A stretch of 64,000 nt of DNA from Stylophora pistillata (GCF_002571385.2 NW_019217858.1:401218-465217), one strand, 5' to 3'. Shown: positions 1,484 through 21,600, counted from the first letter of the stretch. Numbers and translations are program-made. Notes: generated by a model not told the origin, from the sequence alone.

Positions 1484-2012
1484 AGACAAGAAAGGGAAGT
1501 GAGAGTTTTTGCGCAGACTCACAAATTCACAACGTCCTTCCTCACACCCAAGTCTTGCATGTAAAAGCCGAGAAGAAATAGGTGCAAACAAAAAGAGATG
1601 GAGAGCTGGGTTAGAACAGGTTTACAAAGTCAGAACTTCCATCCTTACCCCTAAGCCTTAAAACCCGCGAGGAAATAGATGAAAACAAAAAGAGATGTAC
1701 AGGTGGTCAGAAAAGACTTACAAAGAGTCCGAACTTCCTTCCTTACCCCCAAGCCTTGAAACCCGCTAAGAAATAGGTAAAGACAAAAAGAGAGGGAGAG
1801 AAGGTGAAAACAGATTTACAACATTTCAGAACTTCCTTTCTTACCTCAAGCCTTAAAATATCTGCGAGGAAATAGATGAAGACAAAAAGGGATAGAGAGG
1901 TGGTCAAACAGATTTACAAAAATTCAGAACCTCCTTACGCCAAGCCCTAAAACTCGAGAAGAAATCAGGGAGGGATGGGTGGACACAAAAAGGAATAGAG
2001 AGGTGGTCAGAA
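1484..2012. repeat. Degenerate tandem repeat, ~97-bp unit, ~5 copies
   Basis: gaaatag…acaaaaagaga…tttacaaa…cagaacttcc…ccaagcctt recurs at about 1575, 1672, 1770, 1869, 1961. Confidence 0.85.
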
Positions 2013-2063
2013 ATTTGTTCGAAAGACACGAAGAACAATCATGTTTCATTTTCAATGTTCGTT

Positions 2064-2069
2064 TTTATT
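2064..2069 (-). terminator. Polyadenylation signal AATAAA (distal)
   Basis: tttatt on the plus strand, TG-rich sequence about 25-40 nt downstream. Confidence 0.55.
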
Positions 2070-2114
2070 GACAATAAACTAAACCCCCCTAAAGTAAACA
2101 TAAAATTGGGATTT

Positions 2115-2179
2115 ACGTTCTTTTCATCAGAAGATAGAGCCGCGAGATGCTTTTTTCTGCCTTCATCATTTGCGAACGT
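2115..2179 (-). promoter_or_regulatory. Candidate eukaryotic SECIS element
   Basis: RNA 5'-ACGUUC GCAA AUGAU GAAGGCAGA AAAAA GCAUCUCGCGGC UCUAUCUUC UGAU GAAAA GAACGU-3': 6-bp helix I, internal loop, UGAU/UGAU non-Watson-Crick core, 9-position helix II (one C-A mismatch), unpaired A-run; fits AUGA-N11-AA-N24-GA. Confidence 0.55.
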
Positions 2180-2750
2180 TCCAGCACCGTGAGTTAAACA
2201 AAGCAATTAACCAAAAAGAAATTAACTGTCTCTAACAACTTAACCTAATGGATATATATCATTTGCCCTCTGGTGTGTTTTGGGGCTCAAATTGAAATCA
2301 TGTTTCCGTTTTTCTTCTTTTTGCAAGCATCGATAGCTAGCCGTCCCATAAACAAACAAACCTTAAATAATGTCATTCATCAATTGTAAAATTTCCTAAG
2401 AATTGAGGTAAAAAAGGCCAGAAATTCACCCGCGTCAGCTAGCCCAAAACTACTATATCACATATTTTTTATAACGTCTACTTTTCGAACATCGAGAACA
2501 AGGTTCTCACAAACAAATCATCGTCCACGTTAAGGCTTGCTCTGTTTATCAAAACGATGTGAACTTCTCAATAAAATAAAATTAACTTGTTATAAATTAT
2601 TAATACTTTGCGATAACGTGACCCAACCACTACATATATTTATTTAAGCATTCTCGAGGTACAATAAAGCAAGTTACAAATAGCGTGACTTTTGTACAGT
2701 TCCGTGGGCGAAGCTGAGCTTTCTACTGTACTGGCCTTTTCATGAACTGT

Positions 2751-3188
2751 CTGGAACGAAAGGAGACAAAAGAAAACTGTTAGTGAGATTCGCAATGAAC
2801 CACTGAAAAAAAAGAGCCACTTAATTTAAAGAGCCCACCTTAAACTTTATGCAAGCCAGCGACCTTAATTTCGTACTGCAACGATCTGAAAGCTAATTCA
2901 CTTAACTGAAACTGTGTGAAACCTTCCGCAACCAGGAATGACCAAAAGAATGGATAAAGTATAGTCTGCACTCGCGTCACGTGACTCATCCAGCGGAACC
3001 TTATCCCCGTTTCCTTAGCACGCAACGATTAGGGGTNNNNNNNNNNNNNNNNNNNNNNNNNNNNNNNNNNNNNNNNNNNNNNNNNNNNNNNNNNNNNNAT
3101 GGGAACCATGACGTCTCAGTTCTGTTCTCTGCTTCACTAAGTTTGTCTTGCAAAATTCCCACCTAAGCAAAGATCCATTTTTACTCAC
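2751..3188 (-). other. Predicted 3'UTR intron (contains the assembly gap)
   Basis: Donor AATG|GTGAGT 14 nt after the stop; branch CTCACTAAC plus polypyrimidine tract plus CAG acceptor at 2751-2753. Confidence 0.65.
3037..3098. other. Assembly gap (62 N)
   Basis: Run of N; left flank resembles a SINE fragment. Confidence 0.99.
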
Positions 3189-3202
3189 CATTCCTGTTTT
3201 CC

Positions 3203-3660
3203 TCAGCATTTGGTATGGAATGAGTTCTTTTTGCAGATGGTCTTTCCTTGACCAGCATCGCCGCGTGCGCAGAAGCACTCTTTGCATGCGTACTGATCTC
3301 GTTTGATTTGCTCCTTCCACGCACTTACACTGGCTTGTTGTAATGCTCCAAATTTATCTTTGTCATCTGATCCTAGGAATGGAAGGCCAAACACAGATCC
3401 TTGGGTGGACTTCATTAACGACACGTACTCGCCCTCAGGAAGGGTAGCTGTACCTAAACCAACCTCGGGTCGCTTTCTGTAATACACATTCCCTCTGAAG
3501 TTTTGTCCAATGACTTCGCCGCGGAACTTTCGGTATTTTCCAATTACGTTTAAGATGATGTCTTTAGATTCCAACATGCTGCCGATACTTTCGAGAGAAG
3601 CGAAGTCAGCCATTGGATGGCGATCAGTGCTTGTTAATAGCAGGAAGATCTTGGTGGCAG
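3203..3660 (-). CDS. Exon 19: VWA-like C-half plus Cys-rich terminus, stop TGA 3203-3205
   Basis: ttcccgcag acceptor; ATKIFLLLTS…LNVIG…CKECFC…C…C*. Confidence 0.85.
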
Positions 3661-6600
3661 CTGCGGGAAAACAAAATAAATTTTTACCGATGTCTCATTG
3701 TACAAACTTACACATCTAAAACATAGCCAGAAGTGCTTCACACGAAGTTTAAAGAAGTCCTCTCATAAAACTTTTGCGCAACATCGTTCTGGTACATTAA
3801 CGCACCAGAGGTGGAAAACGGAGGAAATTTCAAGTCAGCTTAGTAGCAGAGTGTGCAACAGAAATTTACGACTGAAAATCACCCATATCGCTTTATCCCA
3901 AATATGTAAATAAATGGGTTTTTTTTTTGTCTTTTCACTACAATGTTGAGGTGACGTCGATACTTGACCTCGCTAGAGACCTATAAGCCATGAATCAGTT
4001 AATTTCCTGCCCTCCTTTTTTTCACGAAAAAGTTATATTTTCGCATTTATCCTTGTTGTCTCTTTATTGCCACTCACCTGGTCTGAACGGATAATTATAG
4101 GCTGCGTAGGCCATAGCCTCCAAAGCATTACTACTGTCGTTGTCAGAATCTCCGTTGGAGAACTTCAGATGCTCAAACGCATCCTCGACGCTGTCAATAT
4201 CGTTCATCAGCTGACCGTCAAGGGTGATGGCGTGCGGGCCTTTGTGTGTCAAGCGACCACCGAATCCAACCACTCCAAAGCGGAAGGAGAACTTGGACTC
4301 ACCCAGGGACTCAGCCATGCTAGAGAGGAATGTCGGTATCTTCTCAGCATAGCTCTTGAGGATGGAGGTCTCAGGTACAAAAACAACAACATCTACAGCT
4401 TTGTCTGCTTTCTGGAACCATGTCTTACCGATCTTGTTAGCGCCGCAGCGTCCTAAGAAGATAAAGATTACATAAACGGGTCAGTTCAGTAAGAGATCTC
4501 CCAGGCTTTCCACGAAGGACATGCGTCCTTGTTAGTGTGTGCTAAGAAAATTCTCCTGAAGTTCAAGTTTTCTCAAATTTCTCGTTCGCAATTCGGGTTA
4601 GTCAACTCCATCCTTAGCAATTGTCGTTTTTTTTTTTTCCAATTATTTTTACTACTGTTCTGGTGAGATGTAATTTTTAGCTTACCTAACCGTAAAAGGT
4701 CGTCACAGAGAACGACCCATAATATTCTGATGAAGCTCCATTGGAAGTACAATCAATTCACTTACCGCACTCTGGCAGGTACTCAGCCCACATTCCTTTC
4801 ATTCTAACGAGTTCGATATAGGCAGCAGTTGAATTGCAGTGCTTCATGTCTTTGGGAGTGTTAGAGTCGCATTCTTTGTAATCTTGCTCGCAGGCCTTTA
4901 CGAAGGGTCCGGGGTTAACAACTGAGAAGAAGTGACTCAACGGGGAGTTCTTCTCCTTGAAAAGGGCGCGACATCGTTGTATGTAACTTGTTTTCTTGCA
5001 CTTGGGCTTTTCCGGCTCCTCCTCGAGTACTTTGCATTCTGGATCGTGAGAGATCTCCCAAGAGTTCACAAAATCGGTTAATCACTTCGCTGGGGTGTTG
5101 TTAATAGTCATCATCTCATCATGGAATTCATTGTTGTTTGTTCCGAGGAGACCTGAAGAAAGATTAATAAGAATAAGTGGGACAAAACTGACTCAACAAG
5201 AAAAAGGCCAGGGGTAGTTGACTTTTCCGGCAAAAAAGTATTATCGATTTCATTTGCAGTGTATTTGCAAGAAAATTATTACAGTGAATACAAATTGCTG
5301 GGACCATAAATTAGAAATCCATCCATATCGTACCTGCCATACGTCCATGGAACCACCTTGCAATGTTGAAAGTACACAAATAGTGCTCAACATCGCAAAC
5401 GATCTCCAAGCCCATGTCATGACGGAAAACGATGAAGGATCCTTGCCTTTGGACTGTGGTGTTGAAGCTCTCTACCGGAAGCTCGCTGTGATAACCGTCG
5501 GAGACTTTGTTTCCTGATGGAGATACCTTGACAATCGTCTCAACTCTACCGTCTTGATATATCTTCACGCTCGAGTCCTCCGTGAGAACGATGATGGCTG
5601 TTTCTTGACTAAGGATTGTGAACTTGTTGTCGCGGACATCTCTTGCTAAGACGTACATGCAGCCTGGCTTCCTGTAACCTGGGAATTTGTAGTAGGTGCC
5701 GTCGAACGTGTACACGTGGGGTCCACCAAAGATCATCGCCGTACCTTTTTGACACAAAGTGAACGTATCATTGGTAAGAGTAAAAAAAAGATGAAAAGGA
5801 TACAAAATCAACCTTAGTATAGTACGTAGCCTGCAACAAACATCACTTCATCCTCTAATTAACAGTTGATAAGAGTAGACGAGCCTATAATTTCGTGGAT
5901 TTTATCTAACTCTACCAAGTTTTCTTACTCAAACTACAAAGCAAGAGAAAGAAGAAACTCAAGGATAGAAGTAAAAGGAAGAATCGCTGATCAGATAGAT
6001 AAACGTCGTTCTCAAGGATCCAAATGAAAATATTAGAACAAGCTTCACACAATGAACTTACTGTTAAACGGTGGGATCCAATTAATTGGGTTCAGAGCAT
6101 AGGACATTTGCGACACTCGATGATTCATCCTTTTCTGCCAGTAGCGTTTAGCTCCGTGCAGGCTGCGGACGCGCGTGGAAATCATCTTCTTGGTGTGATA
6201 AAGGTACCTGTGGGCGTGGTTCAGATACAGGACAGTTTTTTCGTGCTGGATAATGGCCTCGTACAACGTCAAGGTGTAGTTTCTCAGCTCAGCATATCTT
6301 TGCGAGGTTAAGTTGTAAGCTTCACCATACAGTTCAAGGCACATCCTCATGGTCTGGTCGAAGGCAATCCGTGAGTAGTTCCTGACTTTACCGTATAGTT
6401 CTGGCAAACTACTTGAGTTGCACACATCGAGGGTGACATTTTGGACGACTCCATAGACACCGGCGGTGAAGTTTCGAGTCATGTTAAATCCTACACTGCA
6501 CCAATGACGCGTGAAATTCAGAGCTATTGGAAGGTATTTCTTCATCACGGTGGTGTTGTAAATGGCTTGAACAGTTCTATTGAACACACGTTGGTAGATC

Positions 6601-9600
6601 TTCATGGTTTTGTTCAAAGCAGAAACAGAGTAGTTCCTGGTCTGAGCCAGTGCCTCTTGGTACAGCTTGGCTGTCTTATTCAGTGCAATGGTTGAGTATT
6701 TCACGGCGTGGCCCAGTGCTGTGCTGTAAAGTTTGAGCGTCTCGTTGAAAGCTACTCTCGAATAATTCTTCGTCTTGCCGAAGGCTTCTACTAGACATGT
6801 GGAATTGTAGATATCGAGGGTTACATTTACAGCAACTTCATAAACCTCGACTGTAAAATTCTTGGTGATACCGTAACACTGACGGGAAAGGTTCAAAGCC
6901 ATTGGAATATACGTCTTCATGAAGGTTGTGTTGTAAACGACCAACACTGTTTTATTGTATAGACGATGACAAAGTCTCAGAGTCCTGTTCACAGCCACTG
7001 TTGAGTAGTTCCTGGCCATTAGCAACGCTTGTTGGTAGATCTTGACCGTCTTATTCAAAGCTAACATCGACAGATTCTTAGCTTTCAGCAATCCCTGTCG
7101 GTAGAGTTTGACCGTGTTGTTTACCGCCATCGTCGAGAAGTTCTTGGCATCGTGGAAAAGCTCGATTGTTTGGTTATAGGCTGTAGCTGAGCAATTACTA
7201 GCTTGACGTAGAGTTTTCCTGTAAAGCTTCACTGTAGCATTGATAGCGATCTTGGAATAGCTCATGGCTTTGCCCAAGGCCTCGGATGGGCAGCTTGAAT
7301 TTAAGATATCCAGCGTAACGTTCTGAGCGACTTTGTACACTTGCACGGATATATTAAGAGTGCGGTCCATGCAAACATTGTACCACTGGCGAGAAAGGTT
7401 CAATGCACGAGACACATATTTGTTAGTAGCATTGTAATAATGATGGGAAAGATTCAGCGCACGAGACAAGGTAACATTATAACAATGCCGGGACAAGTTC
7501 AGCGCACGTGAAAGGTATCTGTTGGTGACGTTGTAGCACTGGCGGGACAAATTCAAGGCACGTGATGCATATTGGCTGGTGACGTTCTTTACTAGGGTCA
7601 TGTTCAAACCACTTAAGAAGTTCCTTGTGATGTTGAAGTAATGCGCAGACTTGTGAAGGTATCTCACGGTCACGGGGTGATACCTGGTCCTCCTGTAAAT
7701 GTTACGTAAGAGCCTCACCATCTTGTGACGATAGACCGTTGCAAGTTTTCTGGAAATGTTGAGGTAATGGACAGTGGTATTTGCATACTTCTGGGTAAGA
7801 GGATGGTTCTTGCCCAGGTTGTAGGCGTTTATCACAAATCTGTACGTCTGCTGGCGGTAGAACACTGCAAGGTCCCTGGTAACATTGAGGAAGTGAAGGG
7901 TTATGTTGATGTATTTTTCTGTGAGATGATTCTTGGTTAAGTTGTAAACCTTCATGACATAGCCGTATGCTTTTTGCTGGTAGAACACGGTTTTGTTCAA
8001 AGTTACCGCCACCCATGCTTTACTGATGGTCTTGGCACGGCCCGACATAATTCTGGCCTTAACCTTAAGCTCAGTTAACTTTTCAACTGCGTTTTGTCTC
8101 AGCTCTCCATATTTGACAATAACATTCTGTTTCAGCTCATTGTACTTCTCAACTGCCATCTGTTTCAACATTGCGATCTTTACAGCAGATTGTTGTTTCA
8201 AAAGTCTTATCCTGTCTGGTACTTCCTGTTTCAGTTTCTCCATTTTTTCAAGAACTTCCCGTCTTATCGACTGAATCTTTATCACTCCGTTTTGCTTAAG
8301 CGACTCAATCTTTGCTAAGAACTGCTGTTTCAGCGCCTCAACCTTAACTGGGGTGGTCTCTCTGAGAAATTGCATCTTTACCAGGAAGTCCTGTTTTAAG
8401 ATCTTAATTTTTTCCACTGAGGCTAAAGCTAGGGTCTTGATCTTTCCGTCAAATCTCGGGATAACAACAGTGACACCATGTTCAGTAACCTGAATATACT
8501 TGGGAAGAGCCAAGCGGAAATCAGTGATGGTCTTGCCGATTGTTACACTGGCGTTACGGATGGCGATATAAGCATTTGTGATGGTCTTGTTGATTGCGAT
8601 ACGGGCGTTGCGTATGGACACCAGAGCTTTAGTGATGGTTCTGTTGACAGCCACATGGAAATCTTGGACAGTTTTGTTCATGGCAACACGGGTATCCAGG
8701 ATTTTCTTTGTGATGATGGAACGAGCAAAATGGACGGTCTTGTTGAGTCTGTGGGTTACATCTACGAACGTGGCGTTCAGATATCCAATAGTGCGGTTAA
8801 CATATCTCATAGTGGTGTTGACAAATTTTAGAGCTGTGAGCGTTGATGCCTTGATGAATCTTGGAGCATTAACAGTTTGGAGAGAGGAGTTTACAAATTC
8901 TATAGTCATCTGCACCTTCCCCCTAAGATACTGTCCATGCCTGTTGACAACGTCCATGGTGACGTTCCTCGTGAATTCCAAACTTCTACGCATTCTTGCT
9001 TTGACGGCATCGTCGATTCCATAGTACTTGGTGACGAAGGCAGCAGTTTCGATCACCTCTGCTCGTGTATCATTGAAGAACCTCAAGAGGGGTTTGGAAT
9101 TCAGTAGAGTTGAATTGATGGCAGCCATTGTTGTGTTCAAGGCACAGGCAAGGCGCGCCCTAGCGATGTTAAAAGTCTCCACTGTCAAGTTCACAGCCAA
9201 ACGGGTCATGTTCAAAGTGTAATTATAAGCACGAGTGCAAAGGACACGTCCCTTTAGAACAGACTCACGGAAGGTCATTTTGCCAAATGCACGAAGCACG
9301 GGACAAGAGTCGATGTCGAGTGCCACCTGGAAAGCTTGTCTACTCACATTAATTACCCTTTCTTTCAGGCCCATCACACTGTCCTTAAGTTCAAGAGCCG
9401 TCTTCGTGATGTTCCTCTGCAATATAGTTACTAGCTTGCTGTAATTGTGATACGCAGGTAGGACAGTGTCTTTGTAGAATGGCAGGACTTTGTTGAAGTA
9501 CAAAGGCTTAACTTCTTCTCTATAGTACCTCATACCTCTTTCCAGTTCTTGTCTGTAATACTTCATACCCTCCTGTAAGGTCCTGTTGATCCACACGCGG

Positions 9601-12600
9601 GTGAAAGTAACTGAAGCGGCAGTCCAGTTGCGGGAAATGGCAATTCCTCTCAAAGTCAAATTCTTACAGCGGCCGATGCAGTCCAGAGCCAAGGCTTTGT
9701 ACTTCTTAATCAACAAGGTGTAATTCCTGTGCAAGGAAACAAAGTGGCTGGCATAGATGCGCTCGTAATGGCCTTTGAGGATTACGGTATAATTCTTGAG
9801 ATGAGATGTCAGGATCGTTGTATAATTGCGAATTGTCGCATTAAGCATCCTTGTATAATTTTGGAATGTAGCGTTAAGGATCTTTGTGTAGTTCTGGAAT
9901 GTTGCATTTAACACATCTGTATAATTCTGTACAGTTACCTGGACAATCTTTGTGTAATTTTGAACTCTTTCTCTCAAGAACCTCGTGTAGTTTTGAACTT
10001 TAGCCTTCAAAATCCTGGTGTAATTCTCGACTTTCGCGGTGATGTTCCTGTAATAGACCTTTCCGATCGCCACAAACTTGCTCGTCATGTTCTTGGCTTC
10101 CAATGTCATATTTCTGATCTGTAGAGAGACATTTTTGGCCAGCTCGATGGTCTTGAACACAGAGTTGTGCTCAACGATTTCGCGGAGCTTCATGGTCTTG
10201 AAGTCTTCAAACTTCACGATCAAAGTTTGGCGTGTTTCTTGCATTTTAGTCTTAATCTTATCTGCCATTACTTCAGCCTTAGTTTTAAGATTTTCCATCA
10301 GTTCTTTGACCTTTTCCGATGCCAACTCGACGGCTTTTCCGAGGTTAACCGAAATGTTTTTGACGACTCCTCGACAACTTACAATCAGTTCCTGGTTCCG
10401 GAGGTCTTCAGTTAGTTCCTGCACGCGTTCGTGATGCACGATGCTTTCAATGGATGTACCTTTAATGGCAGTTTGAGCCTTAGCAAGAGCCTTTTCCAAT
10501 TGCATTTGGGGATCAGCCAATAGACTTTGGATCTCTTTCTTAATCTCATCATACCTGTTCTTCATCATAGCACATCTTCCCTTGATTTCAGCTGGAAGAG
10601 TTACGTTCAGATAAAAGATCGCCTCTTTCACTTTGGCTTCAACTTTGGGTTTCATCGCTTTCAGGAACTCCACGATTTCGTCATACCTCTCAAGAACAAA
10701 TTTTTCAACCATTACATAACGTTGTTTCAGCTGGTGTTTCTGGATAAGCCTCTGGACGTCTTCAAGGGCCATGAATTTTGTATAGCTCTTTCTCAGCTGC
10801 TGCCGTGTTTCGTTCAACAGCTCTAGCGTTTGGTTGAGAGCAAGCGAAGTGATATTTGCAGCTTTTTCGAGGAGTGGAAGAGAGATGTTCTTGGCCTTTA
10901 TAAGGTAGAAGACGGTCTTATTCGCCATAACCTTCACATAAGGATGGAAGATAGCAACAAGCTCTTTCGCAGTAATGAATGTGATGTTAGCGGTTTGGTT
11001 GTAAAGAGCGATTGCCTCTCCAGTAATGTTGATCACAGTCTTGTTCAGTTTGTGCAGCTCCTTCTTCCACTCTTCAAACTTAGCTGTGAATCTTACTTTG
11101 GCATCGTTAATCTTCTCCCTGATCCTATCCTCAACAATCTCTTTGAACTCTTCATATTTGTTCGCTAAGAACACTCTGTTCTCGAGGAACTTGCGTTCTG
11201 CGAGATCGAAAGCTTCGAAATAGAGCTCCTCGAGGGTCTTCTCTTTGTTCTCACTATACCACTTTTTCATAGCTTGAGCGGTTGACTGAACGAAATACAC
11301 AGCCCCATCAGCATACCTCAGAACTAGGACCTTTCCTTGAATGAAGTTGGCCTTAACCAAGGGGACGACAGTTAGGTTTATGTAACGAATTCCTTGAAGC
11401 ACCAGAGCCCTGGTCTTGTTGTAGGCTTGAATAGTAATATTCCGTGTCACATTGTAGACATGTAGGGTGAGGTTGCGTGCCAGATTGGAGTGCTTCAATA
11501 AGTACTGAAGACTCAAGTTGCGTGTGAGATTGTAGTACTGAAGGGAGTAGTTTCGGCCCATGTTGTAGTAGTGAATAGTCAGGTTTAGAGTTGCATTGTA
11601 GTACTGCAAGACCATCATCTTAGTGCGATTGACCAGGACCAAAGTCAGGTTCAGTGCTCTTAGAGTTACATTCTTGGTTTCGTTGTAGAATTTTATCGCA
11701 ATCACAGTGGCATTCTCGTAAAGCTTCAGAGCATGGGCAGTAACATTCTTGTAGACTTGGACTGCATGTAACGTGAAATTACTGTAGAGCTGCCTTGCAC
11801 GTAAGGTGGCATTTTTGTACAGTCGAAGTCCATGTGCTGTGAAATTATTGTATAGTCGCACTGCATGGAAAGTTGCGTTCCCGTAGAATTGAAGAGCATG
11901 AGTAGAAATGTTGCTGTATAGGTTCAGTGCGGGTACGGTTATATTACTGTAGATGGCCAGCCCATGCTTACTTAAGAACTCGTAACTCTTCGTAACTATC
12001 TCCTCATAAGTCATGTTCTCGAGCTTTCTAGCCTTGGTGATCAGGACATTCAATTCACTCAACAGCTTCTCCCGTTGAATTCCGATACCTTGGATGACAT
12101 TTGCTTTAAAGTCTTCATATATTTTTAATAGGAGATTCTTGTAAAGGGTATACAGCCTAAGTCCTTCTTGCTGGTGTTCATTGTACAGCACCAAACTGTG
12201 TTTCTTCAAGATGTTATAAGCTGCGAGGGTCCTGTTGACCGTGATGTTTCTGTAGAGGCATGCCATTTCATACGAAACATTTCGCAATTTACTTTCCCAG
12301 TGAAGGCTTGTATTCTTGGCCATGATTCCATACTTGGTGAAAACTCGCCTACTTTCCTTGGCAAGGGAAATCACTTCCTTCACAAATACTTCTCTTGAAA
12401 CTTTCATGTTGACGAGATCAGTTGCTAGGGTCAAAACACGATTGGCAAGATTCAAGATGTCTCTCAGCTCTTTCTCAATTTTCAGCGAGGCATTTCCAAT
12501 GAAGTCTCTCACAAGAAGTGCTCTTTCTTTGATGTTGAATGCTCGAATGAACTCCACTAGTTGTTTCCACTTGGCTGTAATTTGCAAAGCTTCCAATTTA

Positions 12601-15600
12601 GCTATGACGTCCATTTTGGCCCATGCCGCTTTGATCTTGCCAGAAACATCGATTGCACGCAACTGTTTGATAATGTTTAAGACTTCTGCTGTGACATTTT
12701 TGGCAATCATTTGCAGTTTTTCGATGGAGAGGTTCACAAGTTCATCAGGACGCATCTTCAGAAGCTTTTGCAAGGTTTTGTTCAGAATCATTGCCGAACT
12801 ATTGTAAACCAGAATAGCCCTTCGGCTCAGGTTAAGTCCCAGGCTAAGTGACTCGTTTAAAATCATCTTTGACAGATTGAAGAACTTCATGCCCTTTTCA
12901 ATAGTCAAATCCAAGATCTCTTCAGCTGACTTTTGTGAGTTGTGGCGGATAAAAGCAATCAGAGCCGATATGTTAGTGTAAACGGTGTGGTTAACTAATT
13001 TTAGTGCCTCGGACGCGATGTTCAAGGAAACAAGAACAGCCTTATCCATGACTTGGCCAATAGGAACACGTCGGATAGTGATGTTGCGTACTTTGTACAT
13101 TACCTCGAATGCCTGTGGAATAAGGGGTTTGACAACTGGTTCCAAATATTTAGTAACATTGTTCTTTACGTCAAGAGTGAAATTGCGCACTTGATGGACA
13201 ATCCTAAGTACAATAGGGTAGGCTTTTCTTTCGAATGAAATGGAAACGTCCTTCGCAAACTTAATGAGAGGGAAGCGAGTCTGTAGATCTGAGTAGGCAG
13301 TTAGAATGACCTTCCTAACCTGGATGGTAATGTTTCTGAATTCTTTTGTCAAGTTCTTGGCCAGATGGATAGCTTGAAGGGTGACATTCGTCATCAGCTT
13401 GGGCAGAATCCTTGTCAAATTGTTTGTGAAATTCAGCGCTGTTTGACGCAATAGACAGGCTTTCTTAAAGAGGACCTCTACTTTAGGTCGTAGGGTCTTG
13501 TTAAGCTGTTCGAAATTCTGCAGGAAAGTCTTATTCAGCAGCTTGAAATGCTCCTCGATCGTCTTGTTGAAAACGGTAATGTTGCGAACGCTTGTTGTCA
13601 GGTTCTTTGCAAAGATTGTTACATTCCTAAGTGAACAGGATGCATTGAAGTTGCAAGTGAACTTTTTCATCTCAAGCATGTACTGGTCATAAATGGGGCC
13701 AAGCTTTTTCCCGCGCAATTCAACTTCTCTAAGCCTCACAATTAGCTCGCGAGTTTTGATCTGTACTCTCTCCACGAGTTGCGCGGTTATAATTTGAACC
13801 CTTTGGGAAACACGCTTGGCAATATCACCAACCCTTTCTCCACGCACCATTACTGAATTCGCCATGAGGGATAGATTTTTGGCCCAGCCTTGTAGATCCC
13901 GGCTGATATTCTGGAGATGGATGGTTATATTTCCAATTATGGGAGGAAGCACCTCTCTACGGAGCCGTCTATATGCAACCGTGGCATTCTGGTGAATCGT
14001 ATTGTAAAACTCCGAGGCATTACCGATGATGTGTGTAAAGTTGGCGCTACCAATCATTCTTGTAAGGTTGTTGATAGTATTGTTCAGTGACCTCAGAGTG
14101 ATGTTCAAAAGTCGGAGTGACATGTTGTGAGCCACGCTTGTAATATTCTGCATCAATCCCTTGTAGTTGTAAGTCTTGTATTCAGCGTAAATCTTAAGAA
14201 CGGTAGGCTTGATCTTAGCTTCCAACTTCTTGACAAGCCCTTCGACCTCCTTAGTCAGGTTTTTCGTCATTAGGACAGTCAGGTTGTAGAACCTCACGGT
14301 CACATTCCTGAGTAGGGTCTTAAACACTTGGGCTTGGTTCACCAGAGTAGCTACGGCTGAAGTATTCCACGTGAACGAAATAAGACTAGCCTCAGAATTC
14401 AGGATGTACATCAACCGTGATTCATTTGCTACATTTTCTCCAAGTTTGCGTTGGATCGTAACCTGAAGGCGATTGGCGTTCGGCATTTCTCCCACCACTT
14501 GTCCAGAGATACGAGGCGTGACAGTAACATTAAAAACGATGCTTCTTGAGGCTGGGTTAAATTTAATGAACCATCCTACCTTGTTGTTCTGGTAGCTTAC
14601 AAACGTGCTGGCGACATAGTTCTTCCAGTCAAACCTTCCGGTGAAACCAGCGGTACGATTGAACGCAGAGAAGGTCAAGAAAAGGGACCTCGTTTCGGTG
14701 TCTAGCTTTTCAGTCAAGGTCAGCGTTTGCTTGAAGATGGTTAAGCCTGAGGTGAAGGTCTTAGTGAGTTTATCGTAGTCACAGACAACCCGAAGTGATT
14801 TCTCAAAACCTTTCAAATTGACAGCTATTCCCATGTCGTCCATACTCTTCCAGTTAGCCTCAAAATCCACTGGTGTTCCAGGCAAAACATCTACAGAAAT
14901 TGCTAGTTTTCGGTCTTCTTCAATAAAATCGATCATGTGGTTCCATGTCCTCTTAAAGGCTGAAATCTCCGTTGTGAAGTACAGGCCGCGGTCTTGAGTA
15001 AAGACTCCTCTCACCGTCAGGGGATAAACGGGGAAAATTTCAAAGTGACCTTCATAGTTCCCTGTTTTCCTGTTGAGGTCAAATTGATTTTCGATTTTCT
15101 TGCCAAGAACATCCAAGACGCTGTTGAATGAAAAGCCATTATTCCTGTTCCAGGTAGTCGTCCACGTAAAAGGTTTGCTTGGAATCAATTCCACTCTGAG
15201 ATTTACTGATTTGCGTTGCTTGTACCAAATTAGGGACTGAGTGACCGTTTTGTCGGGCTGATACTCGACGACAAGAGTGTTGGAAAGTTCCTTAGAAGTG
15301 TTTCTGAAAACTCCTGTCACCGAAACTTTCTTGCCTTTAGAATAAATCACAGCGAACCTGCCTTCATGATAAGAATCCTCGGTGTTAGAGTAGTTGTAAT
15401 AAGAAGCATCCCAGCCATGCTCGAAGGAGTAGCCCATCGCTCTAAGATTGTACTGATACCCAAGTTCGTGAGTCTTGTCGGTCTTGGTATAGATCAGTTT
15501 TGCGCTATCTAGGAAAATGCTTTGGCTTCCATTTCGGAGCATGCGGAACGTTAGAAGCTCTTTTACACCAGGTCTCTGGGTGACGTATGCACCTTCCCAT

Positions 15601-18600
15601 TCAGCGACAAAGCGGCCAAGCTGTGCACGATATTGAAGTACCTTACGTTGAGTGTTATTCAAGAACATCAAAGATGATTTCGCTAGAGTAGATTTGTTCC
15701 AAAATAAGTGAACGGCTGCTTCTTTTAGGATCTTTCCATTAAGCCAAACTCCCTCAAAGCCAACATGCTTCTTTAAAACTGTGGCGTTGAATCCAATTGC
15801 TTTCTCGCTGCCATTGCGGAAGTAAAAGGTAGCATCAGCGGATCTGTTCACGATTGTTGTGTTAAAATGAATGCTTTTCAGCTCCGTTGGGTGCATGTAG
15901 CTCATCCAGGATTCAAAGAAAACTGTCTTGTTGAACTTGGCAGTTAAGCGGTTAGCAGTTTCTGTTGGGTTCTTAAACCATTGCGTCTTCAGTTCACCCG
16001 TTCTATTAAGGACCGTCAAGTTTAGAGACATACTCTTCTCCACCGAGCTGTTTGAGAAAACAGCGCAGATTTTCCCATGCGACCGACCAAGGTATTCAGG
16101 ATAAATGCAAGCAGTTTTCTGGGAAGTCAGATTCTTAAAGAATCCGACAAGAGCGACACTGTAATTTTGATAGGCAGCTTGGAGGATGACTTTCTTGTTT
16201 GTCCCCAGTAAGAAGACTTTGCTCAACAGGCTGACGGATTTGTTACAGGAGCTCACGTTTAGAAGCACTCCCAAGTTGGATGGATTACGAAAGTAAACAA
16301 AAGTAGTATTCAAGGTCTTGTTCTTGACTGCAACATTAAACTTGAGTCCCTTTTCGGCCTCAGAGTTCAAAAGCGTCCAGATAGCCTCCATGCTTTGGTT
16401 AACAACTGACGCATTGAACTTGATGGATAGCTCATTCTCATTCTTCAAGTAACTCCATACAGCTTCCACTGTTTTGTTCAAGGTCGAGGCATGGAACTTG
16501 ATGGATCTTTCTTTTTCATCTCTGTAATAACTCCAGGCAGCCTCTACGGTTCTGTTCATTACTGAGGCATTGAACTTGAAAGAATCTTGATGATCGCTCT
16601 TTCTGAGACTCCAGATGGCCTCAACGGTCCTATTGGAGGCGGCCGCATGGAATTTGATCGCTCTCTCGTCATCGCTCCTTACGTAACTCCAGGTGGCTTC
16701 CACAGTTTTGTTCATAGCCGAAGCATTGAACTTTATGGAATGTGCATATTCACCCCGAAGATAGCTCCAGACAGCTTTTACAGTTTTGTTCGAGGTGCAA
16801 GCATGAAATTTAATGGCACGTTCCTCTCCAATCTTCACAAAACTCGAACCAACTTCAATGGTTTTGTTCATGGCGGAAGCGTTGAATTTGATAGATCTCT
16901 GTTTCCCGTCAAAAGTGTAACTGAAGATAGTCTCAGCAGTTCTGTTGAATCCAGTAGCATTGAATTTTATGAACTTCTCATTGGTGAGGTTAACGAAGGT
17001 CCATGCTGTCTCTACCGTCTTGTTCATAGCAGATACGTTGAACTTTAAACTCCTCTCTCTGGCGAAATTCAAGAACGATAAGGTTGTTTCAAGAGTGTTA
17101 TTTAGGCAGTTAGCTTTAAACTTCAATCCCTTTTCACTTGTCAAGTTGAAGAAAGTCCAGGAGGCCTCGACAGTTTTGTTGAGTGCACTGCCTGAGAACA
17201 GCAAACTCTTCTCAGTTCTTAAATTGACGAGAGTCCACGTGGATTTTACGTTCTTATTGGCAAGACTGGCGTCCAATTTCAGATTTTTCTGTTTGTCCGT
17301 ACTTAGCAAGGTCCATGTGGCGTTCATCGTTTTGTTCAGGGCGCTTGCGTTGAAAATTAACTTCTTTTCATTGGGAAAGTCAAGGAAAGTCCAGGACGAG
17401 TTGATGGTCTGGTTTTCTGCGCTGGCTTTAAACTTCAAACTCTTTTCGTTTGCAAGGTTAAGGAAGATCCATGCGGCATCGATCGTCTTGTTAAGAGCAC
17501 TTGCTTTAAAGTTCAAACTCTTTTTGTCTTTCACGCTTGCAAAGATCCAGGAAGAAGCGATGCTCTTGTTGAAAGCAATTGCCTGGAATTTCACGCTCTT
17601 TTCATTTTGCATGTTCAGGAAAGTCAAGGAGGAGTTCATCGTCCTATTTCCACAATGAGACTCAAATCTTAAGGTCTTCTCGGGTCCCAAGTTTAAGAAG
17701 GTCCAAGTAGCATTGTAATTCTTCTTTCCACAGCTTGCGTTGAACTTTAAGCTCTTCTGATGTTCTAAATTCAAGAAGGTCCAGAAGGAATTGATCGTCT
17801 TGTTTCCAAAACTAGCATTGAACTTCAAACTCTTCTCATTTCTCAAGTTAACTAAGGTCCATGTGGCATTGACGGTTTTATTCAGAGCGGCGGCCTCGAA
17901 CTCCAAACTCCTTGCTGTATGGCGGTTGATGACAGTCCAACTTGCCCGGGCTGTTCTGTTGAGGGCGGAAACATTGAAACGTACTCCCTTTCTGTCGCCG
18001 AAATGAAAGTATGACCATATGATCTCGGCCGTCTTGTTCAGGGCAGTGACATTCATTCGTAGTTCTTTCTCTTTCCCTACATTTACGTATGTCCACATAG
18101 CCTCCAGAGTCTTATTCAGAGCCGTCGCGTTGAACTTAATGCTCTTTTCTTGTGTTAAATTATGGAAGGTTAAAACACTTTGGATGGTGTGATTCAATGC
18201 CAAGACTTTAAGTCGCATTCCTTTCTCTGTGGTGAGGTTGACGTACGACCATACCGCCTCGATGGTCTTGTTAAGGGCTGTTGCATTAAACTTCAAGCTC
18301 TGATCATTTGTTAGATTGAGGTACGTTAAGGCTGCCTCCAAGGTCTTGTTCAGGCCAGTAGCATTAAATCGAAGCCCTTGTTCTTGCCCAGCGTTGACGT
18401 ATGACCAAACGGCGTCGACGGACTGGTTAAGGAGGAGTCCCTGAAACTTGACTGCTTTACTTTGTGTCAGATTCAGATACGACCAGACAGCTTCTGCTTT
18501 ACTTCCAAGCACAGTGCCATTTATTTTTAAGGACCTTTCATTGGTCGAGTTGACAATACCTGTGTACCAGCTGATTACACGGTTTTTGTTTTCATGGGTT

Positions 18601-21600
18601 CCAGTGAATTGAATACCTTTCTCTTGCCCAGCCTCGAGATATGATCCACGAAGGGTAAAGGACTGCTGACATGGACGAGCAAACAGGCGGAGGACGCCTT
18701 CTTTCTGAGCTTTGAGATGTCTTCCTGTAAGCTCGATTCCCGCCTTTGTTGGCTTGTTGCTAAAGCTGAAAACAAAATCGTCTTCTTCCTCTCCAAGTTT
18801 TCCATTGAAGCTGATCTTGGTTTGGGTGCAAGTATGATTTGCTAGGAAACTGATGCTCTTCTTTGGGACATTAACTTCTCCAGTTGAAAACATGTACTTG
18901 CCTGGCCAGTAGGTCAAGTTACTGACATATCCATACGCATTTGAATGGTTGTAGAGCTTAGTCAACTGTGTGATGGTGTAATTGCTATATGAAGCGGACA
19001 ACTGGAAACCCATATCTCGATAAGGGCTGTCCACCCCCGAGTTGTTGAAAAAGTGACCATTAACAACGATTGGGTGTCCATAAACAGCGTCCTTTCCAGA
19101 ATACGTGAGATTCACCGCGTGCGTTTTGTTGTTGTAAGTTGCTTTGAACTTGCCAAAATTTAAGCCAAGAGCAGCAGTAGACACACTGAAAAGTTTGCCA
19201 TCCTTTTTAAACCACATAGTTCCATTTGCCTCCAGGTTTCGCTCCCACGTTGCTCCAGGTGTGGAAATTACAGCAATCACATCATATTTGTTATCGTCTT
19301 CAGTTTGCAAGCGTTCTGCTATCAACTGATATTTAGTGAGCTTAGGGTCTGTGCGTGTCATTGAAATACTGAAGGAAGATGGACCAGAAAATGGGAAGTA
19401 CGGTGACTCGTAGTCACGGTAAGCCAAAGGCACAGACAGCTGACTGCAGAACGTAAGTCCAAGTACACGTGTCAAGTTCAGGCAAGGTGCAGGCTGTTGG
19501 AAAGATGAAAACAGGAGTTTTACAATGTGATGAAAAGTTAAAGGGAAATGACAAACCTAGTAATGCATATTAACAATTTCAAAATATTGCTTTTTCTTTA
19601 TTTTTTGGGCGTAAAAGTTTTCCTTAACTCTTACAACAAAAAAATAACTCCTAAATTTTGTCGGATTAAGCTCTACTTCCGGGTAACACATTTTATTTCT
19701 ATCTTATTTCTTAAGAGAGTTCCATCCTACCAGCTGTAGCTTTGCTTTGTTCTAAGCATGTCATGCATCGTCTTAAATAAGTAACAATGCATTAGACTCT
19801 GTCCTTAAATGCTTACCTCAATCCTTCTCGGCGCCCCTTCAATAGCTAATTTCTCGTCGTTGAGAGTAACGAAAAGTGATGACCTACGAGAAAATGAACC
19901 CTTTCAGCCCCAAGAGTGACAAGCATCTAATTTCTGCTCATAGTAATACAGCCGAGTCATTCGTCAAGATCATGAGAATGTAGGAGATGATTGCCAATCC
20001 ATAGAACTTTGATTGGAAAACAAATTCTCCTTGCCAGTTCCAAAAGAAATGTGTAGTTTAGAGGTATAGGGAACATGCATACTGATGTTAAGGTTGTAAA
20101 GGGTTAAAAAAGACTTATCATGTAACACCACAATCATCATTAAGTAAGACTGTGTTTCCTACCACAATGATGGCATCATGAAATGGAAAGATGTCAATAG
20201 AAAAGAAAAGCTTTACTTACGATACGTTGACAAACTGAACAGGTTCCTCTGGGACACCCAGTTCAAATTTCAAGATTTCTCCTTGCGCATATGATGCATT
20301 TCCCTTGAGGTGTGTTACAGTGTACAATGAGGAATTGACAAGGACGCCAGCTTCGGCATACACTGCGCTCACTCCCATACGACCACTCACGTCCACAATA
20401 GCACTACAAAACAAAAATGCCATCGACAAGTGAGACGCGGTTTAGGAAAAAAGACCGCACAATGGGCAACACTGCTGTAAGGCAGATGAACGGTTCCCTC
20501 GACTCCCTGGAAAATCTAATCAATCCTTCATTCTTCAGCTTCCCTTCGTTGTTAACTATGACAACGATGGAGCAAATCCGAAAAAGTTATATATTCATAT
20601 ATAAATACATAAAAACTAAGATCAACCCCTTTAGCGATCGCGCCTTAAATAGCTTGTTAGGAGATTTAAGTAAACATCTTAAGGGTGCAATGCCAGTCCG
20701 TATTTTGTTTTGTCACTCACTTATTTTATCATGTTTTTGGGGAGACTTTACAAAATTACCACTTCAAGTGGACACTTAAATATATTTTAATTTAAGTTTC
20801 ATGTGAGCGAAGGTTTAACATGTCACGAATATGATGCGAGAATCTTTTAAACTTGCTGATTACCAGGCCGATACTAATGATAATCGGTAAAAAAAAAACT
20901 CATCCACTTTAAATCTGATTTAAAACTCAACTTGTCTTTATACAAACACTGCACACTGTCCTCAATTATTTTACCTGGGTTTGACATGCCCACGTATATC
21001 AAAACGCATCTTTCCCCAAAACATGTTCCTGATGTCAAACTTCCCGGCGAGTTCCACTGAGGCCACAGTGGTTCCCTTGGCGCTCATTTTAAGCGGAAGA
21101 CCAAGGATGGTTGGGACAGTAGTCTTAGCGTCCAGGAACATCATGCTTTTACTGAAGCTCTTCTTGCCTCCCTTAGCTAAAGCAATCAAGATGTCGATCA
21201 CGTTGATTTTGTCCACTTCGTCATTCAACCAGCTAATGTCGTCAAAGCTGAGAAGTCTCAATTCGTTACCAAACATTTTCACAGAAACAGCCCCAGATGG
21301 GTGATGCTTACGGTTGTCCATCTACAAAGAAGTAACGAAATATGAATTCTTTGAAATGAAAAATCCAAGGTTTTTTCAGGCTTTAGACAAGATGTCGTTA
21401 ACAAACGAAGATGAATAACGAAACGTGACAAAAACTGATCGATTTTATTGACAAAAATTTAATTCAGTGCACTGGAACACAATCATGAAAGAAAAGAAAA
21501 ATTTAAAAAGGGGTTAAAAATGAGAAATCTGACATATGAATTTAAGATCTAGTCAATCTCCAAGCTATCATCTAAGATCACACTTTGTTGAAAGTTTTTT

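What the first reader, a model, noticed from the sequence alone, without database searches (positions are those of the whole stretch)
2064..5152. Candidate selenocysteine-containing giant lipoprotein: in-frame UGA paired with a SECIS in the same transcript
Seen: the only interruption in ~5,975 spliced codons is a UGA, and the predicted 3'UTR has a hairpin matching the eukaryotic SECIS consensus about 45 nt upstream of AATAAA. Established: UGA plus a 3'UTR SECIS is how eukaryotes encode Sec. I know of no apolipophorin, ApoB or vitellogenin family member among described selenoproteins. Inference: this could be a new selenoprotein class, for example a yolk/lipoprotein carrying Se or a redox/cross-linking site beside the VWD-C8 assembly module. 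It would give a Se-dependent switch between a ~5,591-aa truncated form and a ~5,974-aa full-length form, conceptually like ApoB48/ApoB100 but by recoding. Caveat: the UGA position is not an obviously conserved Cys in VWD domains.
Basis: partly seen in the sequence, partly recalled or inferred. Interest (0 to 1): 0.92.

Follow-up and report, generated by a model that had tools for sequence, protein, structure and literature searches.

The report
Selenocysteine tail on a coral lipoprotein
The mRNA of a giant fat-carrying protein of a reef coral holds a real, conserved selenocysteine-insertion signal.

Summary
The internal TGA (5082-5084, minus strand) exists only in this assembly. One DNA and three RNA data sets of the same coral read GGA or AGA there. 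Orthologues have Lys, Ser, Asp, Ala or Thr codons. It is not a Sec codon.

RNA contigs confirm the splice joints, a 3'UTR intron (2751-3188) that contains the assembly gap, and poly(A) ends at about 2044-2058. They also place the hairpin at 2116-2178 inside the mRNA.

That hairpin is a real SECIS:
- It recurs at the matching place in eight other distinct orthologous 3' regions (47-87% protein identity).
- It scores up to 40.3 bits in Rfam, and 7 base pairs show compensatory changes.
- It is missing from relatives whose gene ends in TAA or TAG.

In every SECIS-bearing orthologue the 'stop' after the invariant last Cys is TGA (window 3203-3205). It is followed in frame by 1-4 codons and a second TGA built across the splice joint.

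Best reading (about 0.74): an apolipophorin-type large lipid transfer protein whose terminal UGA is recoded to give a Cys-Sec C-terminal tail. I found no description of such a selenoprotein family. There is no protein-level evidence, and whether the second UGA stops translation or also encodes Sec is open.

The parts
5082..5084 (-). It is a reference-only base at a variable linker codon between VWD and C8, not a Sec codon.
   Evidence: position 5084 reads GGA in X1 and X10, and AGA in X17 and X19; orthologous codons are AAA, AAA, GCC, AGT, GAT, ACC.
4766..5152 (-). Exon with the end of the VWD domain and the C8 domain
   Evidence: RNA joints at 5150/5332 and 4451/4765. Pfam C8 at 23.3 bits against a cut-off of 23.7 (E 7.8e-5), so just under the cut-off, on the piece after the TGA.
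5334..5744 (-). VWD exon
   Evidence: Pfam VWD, E 1.1e-8. RNA contigs cover 5332-5744.
4078..4452 (-). First exon of a VWA-fold domain
   Evidence: RNA joints. Weak Pfam VWA match. AlphaFold model of the orthologous region P0010 has pLDDT 87, and Foldseek matches VWF A1 at E 5e-7.
3206..3660 (-). Last conventional coding exon: rest of the VWA fold, a long helix and a Cys-rich hairpin (CKEC-F-C...C...C), ending in the invariant Cys (3208-3206)
   Evidence: nearly all homologous predicted proteins end exactly at this Cys.
3203..3205 (-). UGA1: the annotated stop and the proposed Sec codon (Cys-Sec-Gly)
   Evidence: It is TGA in every SECIS-bearing orthologue. Relatives without a SECIS have TAA or TAG.
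3189..3202 (-). Four codons (G K Q E) plus TG, the first two bases of a second in-frame TGA split by the intron
   Evidence: The spacer is 12, 9 or 3 nt in different orthologues, always in frame.
2751..3188 (-). Intron (GT..AG) 14 nt after UGA1. It contains the assembly gap 3037-3098.
   Evidence: The joint 2750/3189 appears in three RNA runs. The sequence is checked.
2044..2750 (-). Terminal exon. Its first base A completes UGA2. Eight codons follow (2749-2726), then TAG (2725-2723), then 3'UTR.
   Evidence: RNA contigs and adaptor plus T-run loose ends at 2044-2058. Tail comparison.
2116..2178 (-). SECIS element: helix I, AUGA/GA core in the internal loop, 9-bp helix II, A-rich apical loop with a mini-stem
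   Evidence: Rfam 21.2 bits. Orthologous elements score 40.3, 22.6, 25.8 and 22.2 bits. My own model finds further ones. Covariation. The MFE fold gives the same architecture.
2064..2069 (-). Poly(A) signal AATAAA
   Evidence: Poly(A) ends lie 6-20 nt downstream.
6045..19475 (-). Giant single coding exon (open frame of 4476 aa). DUF1081 lies near its start (about 19182-19484).
20229..30294 (-). N-terminal exons of the lipid-binding module: Vitellogenin_N and Vit_open_b-sht
   Evidence: Own-contig places minus 401217 give window 20229-30294.

Best explanation
The gene on the minus strand (about 30300 to 2044) encodes a secreted, apolipophorin/ApoB-type large lipid transfer protein of a reef coral. 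Its mRNA carries a functional SECIS about 590 nt downstream of the apparent stop codon.

That 'stop' is UGA1 (3205-3203), directly after the invariant last cysteine. It is decoded as selenocysteine by the SECIS / SBP2 / eEFSec / tRNA-Sec machinery. The protein then ends in a flexible ...Lys-Cys-Sec-Gly-Lys-Gln-Glu tail.

Translation then either stops at a second UGA made by the last splice joint (3190, 3189 | 2750), or reads it as a second Sec and stops 3-8 codons later (TAG at 2725-2723 here).

When Sec insertion fails, termination at UGA1 gives an almost full-length protein ending in Cys. UGA1 is only 14 nt upstream of the last exon junction, so this should not trigger nonsense-mediated decay (inference from the 50-55 nt rule).

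The Cys-Sec dyad on a floppy tail next to a Cys-rich hairpin most likely forms a selenenylsulfide. It could act as a redox-active or thiol-capturing end of the lipoprotein. A role as a selenium cargo is the main alternative.

The TGA at 5082-5084 is unrelated. It is a base peculiar to the reference: either an assembly error or a private nonsense allele.

Shown: the mRNA structure, the SECIS and its conservation, the conserved UGA, and the presence of tRNA-Sec. Inferred: that Sec is actually inserted, where translation ends, and what the Sec does.
For: (1) The SECIS is in the mRNA. Three poly(A) RNA runs join 3189 to 2750, and contigs run to poly(A) tails at about 2044-2058.

(2) The same element sits at the matching place downstream of the orthologous gene in eight other distinct sequences:
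- L002: Rfam 40.3 bits, above the gathering score, E 7e-5. L007: 22.6 bits.
- L009: 25.8 bits.
- L030: 22.2 bits, in a spliced metatranscriptome mRNA whose ORF runs 24-5453.
- L004: 35 bits with my model R1, E 2e-5, and not used in training.
- L017, L024 and L026: 73-75 bits with R1.
Outside it, the 3'UTRs of the distant orthologues no longer align.

(3) Structure and covariation. Across 9 sequences, 81.8% of cells pair, against 37-51% when the partners are slid. Seven pairs have changes on both sides. One helix II pair occurs as C-G, U-A and G-C. AUGA, the apical AAA and GA are invariant. Each sequence folds on its own into helix I, internal loop, helix II.

(4) All SECIS-bearing orthologues have TGC/TGT-TGA at the end of the last exon. 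Homologues ending in TAA (L013, L034) or TAG (L008) show no SECIS.

(5) After UGA1 the spacer to the exon-end TG is 12, 9 or 3 nt, always in frame. Among close relatives its changes are mostly synonymous (GGA/GGG, AAA/AAG). In the TAA homologue L013 the spacer is 4 nt, out of frame.

(6) The genome uses Sec:
- Two tRNA-Sec genes at 77.8 bits.
- The best genome-wide SECIS_1 hit (31.6 bits, also under the gathering score) lies 1 kb downstream of an Rdx-family exon (SelT/SelW type).

(7) No other candidate UGA. The 4476-aa exon and the 1809-aa ORF of L030 are uninterrupted.
Against: - No homologue has Cys at the proposed Sec position. Nearly all of the homologous predicted proteins simply end at the preceding Cys; three distant ones differ. 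The classical Sec/Cys test is therefore not met, and UGA1 could be a plain stop.
- Only 1-4 codons separate UGA1 from UGA2, too few for a real coding-conservation test.
- The stretch after UGA2 varies in length: 8 codons in several orthologues, 3 in L017, L024 and L026, and 5 then another TGA in L030.
- One lineage (L005/L006) keeps TGA but has only a remnant of the SECIS, with its middle deleted. The tail is therefore dispensable at least there.
- A short contig of a distant homologue (L033) shows C-TGA, three codons, then TGA, with no SECIS in the 185 nt available.
- Rfam scores are below the gathering score in 4 of the 5 sequences it detects, and Rfam misses L004.
- Folding-energy z-scores are unremarkable for three of five elements.
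- The orthologues come from unnamed metagenome and run assemblies, so the number of independent lineages is uncertain.
- There is no ribosome, mass-spectrometry or 75Se evidence.
- I did not check the N-terminal small exons codon by codon for another UGA.
Confidence: 0.74

Rival explanations
1. The SECIS is real and conserved, but UGA1 is simply the stop codon. The SECIS would serve another UGA that I did not see (in the unverified N-terminal exons or an alternative transcript that shares the terminal exon). Or it acts as a conserved kink-turn / SBP2-binding regulatory element without recoding.
For: - No Cys-for-Sec homologue exists.
- The tail after UGA1 is short and variable.
- L005/L006 kept TGA after losing the SECIS.
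- The family's ancestral state is a protein ending at this Cys.
Against: - Perfect co-occurrence of TGA with the SECIS, and of TAA/TAG with no SECIS.
- The spacer after UGA1 stays in frame.
- The apical AAA, needed for Sec insertion by established knowledge of SECIS elements, is invariant.
- The large exons contain no other in-frame UGA.
- No non-recoding function of a SECIS in a 3'UTR is established.
Confidence: 0.14
2. The hairpin is not a SECIS. It is a conserved 3'UTR element of some other function, or a transposon-derived remnant, that happens to resemble one.
For: - The window's Rfam score (21.2 bits) is under the gathering score.
- In L004 Rfam prefers weak C/D-box snoRNA models for the same stretch.
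- Folding z-scores are modest.
- Sec-encoding retroelements with SECIS elements are reported in cnidarian genomes (PMC8557442, listed; abstract only, not read further).
Against: - The L002 orthologue scores 40.3 bits, above Rfam's curated threshold.
- All Sec-specific features are invariant while the helices covary.
- The orthologous position is kept down to 47% protein identity, including in an mRNA contig.
- A known selenoprotein gene of this genome has a SECIS that also scores under the threshold.
Confidence: 0.06
3. One reading: the TGA at 5082-5084 is a Sec codon, giving a Se-dependent choice between a truncated and a full-length lipoprotein.
For: The TGA is in the assembly, in frame, in an mRNA that does carry a SECIS.
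Against: - Four independent data sets of the species read GGA or AGA.
- Six orthologues have sense codons for Lys, Lys, Ala, Ser, Asp and Thr.
- By my hand alignment of the rows shown, the position aligns with Gly in a nemertean-like homologue.
Confidence: 0.02
4. The gene is a pseudogene, or is broken in this species, and the TGA marks decay.
For: A single in-frame stop in the reference.
Against: - Spliced poly(A) transcripts appear in three RNA studies with an open frame at that codon.
- A 4476-aa exon is uninterrupted.
- Orthologues are strongly conserved.
Confidence: 0.01

Closest known systems
Thioredoxin reductase (animal TrxR, C-terminal Gly-Cys-Sec-Gly)
   Same: Sec sits next to a Cys near the C-terminus on a flexible tail (here Lys-Cys-Sec-Gly in the coral group). 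It is encoded by a UGA that gene predictors read as the stop and decoded through a 3'UTR SECIS. The tail looks like an evolutionary add-on to a protein that originally ended earlier.
   Different: There is no FAD/NADPH oxidoreductase domain; Pfam finds only VWD, C8 and VWA in the C-terminal exons. The protein is a secreted lipid carrier with no obvious electron donor. Several residues, and possibly a second Sec, follow. More distant orthologues have Cys-Sec-Lys.
Selenoprotein P
   Same: A secreted protein with Sec near the C-terminus and possibly more than one UGA read by a 3'UTR SECIS. SelenoP is taken up by lipoprotein-receptor relatives (ApoER2, megalin; established knowledge), the receptor class that also takes up large lipid transfer proteins. 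A selenium-delivery role is therefore conceivable.
   Different: No thioredoxin-like UxxC domain, at most 2-3 Sec, only one SECIS found, and no sequence relationship.
Apolipophorin II/I, ApoB and vitellogenin (large lipid transfer proteins)
   Same: Vitellogenin_N, Vit_open_b-sht, DUF1081 and VWD are present in this order. A nemertean-like homologue has the same set plus C8.
   Different: The gene has a 13.4 kb single exon rich in N-glycosylation sequons. It has an extra C8-VWA-Cys-rich C-terminal module. It also has the UGA/SECIS pair. I found no member of this superfamily described as a selenoprotein.
SelK, SelS, SelO and SelI-type selenoproteins (Sec within a few residues of the C-terminus)
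   Same: Sec is the penultimate or near-terminal residue, so failure to insert it truncates the protein only minimally. The UGA is routinely annotated as the stop.
   Different: Unrelated folds and cellular location. Those families have Cys-containing homologues at the Sec position; none was found here.

Membership tests
Eukaryotic selenoprotein gene (UGA decoded through a 3'UTR SECIS) | SECIS hairpin with an AUGA / GA non-Watson-Crick core, two helices and unpaired A's in the apical loop | tested here: met
   Rfam SECIS_1 full-length matches: 21.2 bits (window), 40.3, 22.6, 25.8 and 22.2 bits in orthologues. Independent MFE folds give this architecture.
Eukaryotic selenoprotein gene (UGA decoded through a 3'UTR SECIS) | SECIS conserved among orthologues with compensatory base-pair changes | tested here: met
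   Nine sequences: 81.8% paired against 37-51% for slid controls; 7 pairs changed on both sides; 0 of 500 shuffles reach the covariation score.
Eukaryotic selenoprotein gene (UGA decoded through a 3'UTR SECIS) | SECIS lies in the 3'UTR of the same mRNA, well downstream of the UGA | tested here: met
   RNA joints and poly(A) ends. The SECIS is about 590 nt after UGA1 in the window and 364 nt after it in the mRNA contig L030.
Eukaryotic selenoprotein gene (UGA decoded through a 3'UTR SECIS) | In-frame UGA conserved in orthologues (candidate 3203-3205) | tested here: met
   TGA in all 10 distinct orthologous sequences with the SECIS or its remnant. TAA or TAG in three homologues without a SECIS.
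   GGA or AGA in other individuals. Sense codons in six orthologues.
Eukaryotic selenoprotein gene (UGA decoded through a 3'UTR SECIS) | Homologues with Cys aligned to the Sec | tested here: not met
   Exhaustive phmmer search plus two word-based searches: nearly all homologues end at the preceding Cys, and none continues with Cys.
Eukaryotic selenoprotein gene (UGA decoded through a 3'UTR SECIS) | Protein-coding conservation downstream of the UGA | tested here: inconclusive
   The spacer is always in frame (12, 9 or 3 nt), with synonymous changes among close relatives. But only 1-4 codons are available, and the stretch after the second UGA varies in length.
Eukaryotic selenoprotein gene (UGA decoded through a 3'UTR SECIS) | Sec-decoding machinery present in the genome | tested here: met
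   Two tRNA-Sec genes at 77.8 bits. An Rdx-family selenoprotein exon has its own SECIS.
Eukaryotic selenoprotein gene (UGA decoded through a 3'UTR SECIS) | Selenium actually incorporated at the UGA | not testable with these tools
   Needs 75Se labelling, mass spectrometry, ribosome profiling or a reporter assay.
Large lipid transfer protein, apolipophorin/ApoB type | N-terminal Vitellogenin_N lipid-binding module with the open beta-sheet domain | tested here: met
   PF01347 hits up to 75.5 bits and PF09172 hits up to 78.1 bits on the window's contig, on the minus strand, at window 20229-30294.
Large lipid transfer protein, apolipophorin/ApoB type | DUF1081 and a C-terminal VWD domain | tested here: met
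   PF06448 at 34.6 bits, inside the giant exon. VWD, E 1.1e-8.
Thioredoxin reductase | Pyridine nucleotide-disulfide oxidoreductase domain that reduces the Cys-Sec tail | tested here: not met
   Pfam finds only VWD, C8 and VWA in the C-terminal exons. The modelled fold is VWA. This is resemblance of the tail only, not membership.
Selenoprotein P | Thioredoxin-like N-terminal domain with UxxC, a Sec-rich C-terminus and two SECIS elements | tested here: not met
   No such domain appears in the Pfam scans. There is a single SECIS in the 3'UTR.

The most novel reading that the evidence does not exclude
Both conserved in-frame UGAs are read as Sec: the 'stop' after the last Cys and the one assembled by the last splice joint. 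This giant coral lipoprotein would then end in Cys-Sec-x(1-4)-Sec-x(3-8). That would be a selenylsulfide/diselenide tail on a lipid carrier. It would either protect the lipid cargo from peroxidation or deliver selenium to oocytes and tissues through lipoprotein receptors. That would make it a cnidarian functional counterpart of selenoprotein P, evolved by recoding a stop codon. A side possibility is that, because the mRNA carries a working SECIS, the reference individual's private UGA at 5082-5084 is itself partly read as Sec.
Probability: 0.25. Interest if true: 0.85.

Novelty: new member of a known kind. Interest (0 to 1): 0.74.

Why it matters
- New animal selenoprotein families are rare. 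None is known among the large lipid transfer proteins (vitellogenin, apolipophorin, ApoB).
- A Sec tail on an abundant secreted lipoprotein would link selenium biology to lipid transport, yolk provisioning and oxidative-stress handling in reef corals.
- It would be a second example, after thioredoxin reductase, of a protein gaining a Cys-Sec end by recoding its stop codon.
- It also shows a systematic annotation blind spot. Every predicted protein of this family is cut at the UGA, so homology-based selenoprotein searches that need a Cys homologue would miss it.
- A practical lesson: the flagged internal TGA was a reference-only base, and only reads and orthologues could tell the two UGAs apart.

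Tried and rejected
rejected by reads and orthologues.
- **Genome-wide calibration of SECIS_1 scores:** only 129 of 7990 candidates were scored and one hit was returned, so there is no usable background distribution. That one hit did serve as a positive control.
- **Redefinition-element hairpin after the second UGA:** the first ~60 nt of the terminal exon are conserved among the coral group. But RNAalifold gives no convincing consensus fold (-1.2 to -3.5 kcal/mol), and the proposed stem is broken in some species. I dropped it as a claim.
- **Coding conservation of the eight codons after UGA2:** this looked good in six sequences (Val codon GTA/GTC/GTG, stop TAG/TAA). But L017, L024 and L026 have an earlier TAA, and the UTR just beyond is equally conserved. 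Left open.
- **Cys-form homologues:** none found.
- **Paralogue on another contig of the same genome:** it ends Cys-Lys-Ala-Tyr-TGA and has no SECIS.
- **Contigs too short to show a SECIS:** L011/L012, L019, L033.
- **Rfam on L004:** it found no SECIS although my own model did.
- **Literature:** four full-text searches found no Sec-containing vitellogenin, apolipophorin or large lipid transfer protein. A metazoan selenoproteome survey does not mention them (PMC3473315).
Exons were searched one by one by reference.
Only about 100 nt around the last joint were translated in a script.
  - Gap letters were neither used nor reported.

Full report
**1. What is in the window.** On the minus strand the stretch 5400-1800 reads as a series of exons.
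- One exon begins at 5152 and ends at 4766. It contains an in-frame TGA at 5084-5082 between the end of a VWD domain and a C8 domain (Pfam).
- Two further exons (4452-4078 and 3660-3206) end in ...His-Thr-Lys-Cys, followed by TGA at 3205-3203.
- Downstream lie GTGAGT at 3188, the N gap at 3037-3098, an acceptor ending at 2751, a hairpin at 2178-2116 and AATAAA at 2069-2064. Coordinates were re-checked.
- Upstream is one open frame of 4476 aa (6045-19475).
- Pfam Vitellogenin_N, Vit_open_b-sht and DUF1081 hit the same strand at window 19182-30294.

The gene is therefore an apolipophorin/ApoB-type large lipid transfer protein. It has an added C8-VWA-Cys-rich C-terminal module. An AlphaFold model of the orthologous region P0010 has pLDDT 87. 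It shows a VWA fold, a long helix, a Cys-rich beta hairpin and a floppy last six residues. Foldseek matches VWF A1 at E 5e-7.

**2. The gap and the transcript.** Runs holding this DNA are from a coral. I laid one DNA run (X1) and three poly(A) RNA runs from three studies (X10, X17, X19) on 1900-5900.
- The RNA contigs show the introns 5153-5333, 4453-4765 and 3661-4077.
- In all three RNA runs a joint from 3189 to 2750 (GT..AG) removes 2751-3188 and with it the assembly gap. The gap therefore affects neither the reading frame nor the 3'UTR sequence that matters. I did not use the letters the tool printed for it.
- Contigs continue to 2044-2058, where adaptor plus T-run loose ends mark poly(A) tails 6-20 nt after the AATAAA.

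**3. The flagged TGA is not a Sec codon.**
- At 5084 all four runs differ from the assembly. X1 and X10 read GGA (Gly). X17 and X19 read AGA (Arg). None reads TGA.
- In six orthologous loci the same codon is AAA, AAA, GCC, AGT, GAT or ACC, inside an otherwise well conserved ...GLLGTNNNE...DFVNSWE... context.
- By my hand alignment of the rows shown, a nemertean-like homologue has Gly there.
- The assembly holds only one copy of the exon.

So the T is peculiar to the reference, at a variable linker residue.

**4. The hairpin is a real SECIS.**
- Rfam SECIS_1 matches 2178-2116 over the whole model at 21.2 bits, under the gathering score of 35.
- The last exon (151 aa) found nine orthologous exon products of 67-91% identity. 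An exhaustive phmmer search found more distant ones.
- I fetched the DNA around them and scanned it. L002 has a SECIS_1 match of 40.3 bits (E 7e-5, above the curated threshold) 1.0 kb downstream of the gene. L007 has one of 22.6 bits. L009 has one of 25.8 bits.
- L030 is a spliced metatranscriptome mRNA of only 47% identity, with a continuous ORF at 24-5453. It has one of 22.2 bits, 364 nt after the stop.
- All matches are on the sense strand. No other SECIS_1 match appeared in these loci.
- A covariance model built from four of them found a fifth that was not in training, in L004 (35 bits, E 2e-5). It also found L017, L024 and L026 at 73-75 bits.
- In the nine-sequence alignment AUGA, the apical AAA and GA are invariant.
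- For helices I and II, 81.8% of cells are paired, against 37-51% for slid partners. Seven pairs changed on both sides. One helix II pair occurs as C-G, U-A and G-C.
- Each sequence folded alone gives helix I, an internal loop holding AUGA opposite UGAU, helix II and an apical loop. The energies are not exceptional (z from -0.05 to -4.0).
- Outside the SECIS and the first part of the terminal exon, the distant 3'UTRs no longer align.
- The genome has two tRNA-Sec genes (77.8 bits).
- Its best SECIS_1 hit (31.6 bits, also under the threshold) lies 1 kb downstream of an Rdx-family exon. Genuine SECIS elements of this coral can therefore score below Rfam's cut-off.

**5. Which UGA?** Every orthologue that has the SECIS has Cys-TGA at the end of the last conventional exon.
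- Coral group: TGC-TGA-GGA..., that is Cys-Sec-Gly.
- More distant group (L009, L011, L030): TGC-TGA-AAA.
- The predicted proteins of about 25 homologous clusters nearly all end exactly at this Cys.
- Homologues whose gene ends in TAA (L013, L034) or TAG (L008, from an NCBI chromosome assembly) have no SECIS in the flanks searched.
- After the TGA come 12, 9 or 3 nt and then TG|GTRAG. The next exon always begins with A, so a second TGA is formed in frame across the joint. In the TAA homologue L013 the spacer is 4 nt, out of frame.
- Among close relatives the spacer changes are GGA/GGG, AAA/AAG and GAA/GGA.
- After the second TGA, six sequences have eight codons and then TAG or TAA at the same place (QFMKRPVQ, QFLKRPVQ, QFQKRPVQ, RLMNAPVQ, LSLEWPEQ, QTEPRFVQ), with Val encoded by GTA, GTC and GTG.
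- However, L017, L024 and L026 stop after three codons, and L030 has five codons and a third TGA. The UTR just beyond is as conserved as this stretch.

I therefore treat Sec at UGA1 (3205-3203) as the main claim. Whether UGA2 (3190, 3189 | 2750) terminates translation or is a second Sec stays open.

**6. Evidence that cuts the other way.**
- No homologue carries Cys where the Sec would be, so the classical Sec/Cys criterion fails. The extension would be an add-on to a protein that ancestrally ended at Cys.
- L005/L006 (70% identity) keep TGA and the in-frame spacer. At the orthologous spot, about 70 nt before their AATAAA, only helix I and AUGA remain and the middle of the SECIS is gone. Their tail and the block behind it are also the most diverged. 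I read this as secondary loss, which means the tail is dispensable.
- A 597-nt contig of a distant homologue (L033) shows Cys-TGA, three codons, TGA, and no SECIS in the 185 nt that follow.
- The orthologues come from unnamed assemblies, so I cannot count independent lineages.

**7. Mechanism (inferred).** The SECIS, about 590 nt downstream in the mature mRNA, recruits the Sec machinery to UGA1.
- The product ends in a flexible Lys-Cys-Sec-Gly-Lys-Gln-Glu tail, possibly longer.
- If Sec insertion fails, termination at UGA1 costs only the tail. UGA1 lies 14 nt before the last exon junction, so the mRNA should escape nonsense-mediated decay (established 50-55 nt rule; inference here).
- A vicinal Cys-Sec pair can form a selenenylsulfide, as in thioredoxin reductase. 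But no oxidoreductase domain is present.
- I therefore favour a redox-active or thiol-capturing end of a secreted lipoprotein. Selenium delivery in the manner of selenoprotein P is the main alternative.

**8. Known or new.** Full-text searches found nothing that combines selenocysteine/SECIS with vitellogenin, apolipophorin, large lipid transfer protein or coral in this sense. A survey of metazoan selenoproteomes that includes a cnidarian does not mention such proteins (PMC3473315). The recoding mechanism is the ordinary eukaryotic one and the protein superfamily is well known. Their combination appears undescribed. I class it as a new member of a known kind.

**9. Rules followed.** Exons were searched separately by reference. 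Gap letters were not used.

Noticed in passing
L005 5398-5435 and L006 5398-5435: In one orthologous lineage (70% identity) the SECIS is reduced to helix I plus AUGA, with about 37 nt of the middle missing. TGA and the in-frame spacer are still there. This is an apparent natural loss of the Sec tail.
   Followed up: partly
window 2690-2750 (minus strand) and the matching start of the terminal exon in L002, L004, L007, L017, L024, L026: A strongly conserved block right after the splice-made TGA (core ...GCCCAC.GAACTGTACAAAAG). It is as conserved as the SECIS but has no convincing consensus fold. It could be coding tail, a recoding-stimulating element, or something else.
   Followed up: partly
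window 6045-19475 (minus strand): A single 13.4 kb coding exon (4476 aa) made largely of repeated units full of N-x-T/S sequons. Orthologues have the same giant exon (products of 4299-5186 aa run off loci L006, L017 and L018).
   Followed up: no
window 5084: The site is tri-allelic across data sets: G and A in other individuals (Gly/Arg), T in the assembly. The same exon has further differences shared by all four runs (4953 C>G, 5476 C>T). The assembled individual may therefore be somewhat diverged, or the assembly may be locally imperfect.
   Followed up: partly
window 2213-2219 and 2628-2633: 3'UTR length polymorphisms between individuals: 2-nt deletions in an AT repeat at 2213/2217, and a 7-nt insertion behind 2628. 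This lies near an upstream AATAAA-like site (about 2640) that the transcripts read through.
   Followed up: no
window 2294-2391 (minus strand): A weak match to a Drosophila C/D-box snoRNA family inside the 3'UTR (27.1 bits against a threshold of 101, E 0.08). Probably chance.
   Followed up: no
G000 contigs C335 (61631-79735, +), C26 and C316: Three further large lipid transfer protein genes in the same genome. The C335 one also has DUF1081 and a related Cys-rich C-terminus, ending Cys-Lys-Ala-Tyr-TGA, with no SECIS within 1.5 kb.
   Followed up: partly
L033 405-425: A distant homologue (P0019) shows Cys-TGA-TGC-AGC-TAC-TGA, again two in-frame TGAs a few codons apart. The contig ends 185 nt later at an AATAAA with no SECIS match.
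   Followed up: partly
L035 7506-7625 and 8621-8683 (G000 contig C292): An Rdx-family exon (SelT/SelW type) with a SECIS_1 match of 31.6 bits 1 kb downstream. It is a known-type selenoprotein gene of this coral whose SECIS also scores under Rfam's threshold. A long N stretch lies just upstream.
   Followed up: partly
L013 / L014 1503-1658: A long perfect-looking inverted repeat in an intron of the TAA-type homologue matches plant miRNA precursor models on both strands (67 bits, below threshold). Probably a transposon-derived hairpin.
   Followed up: no
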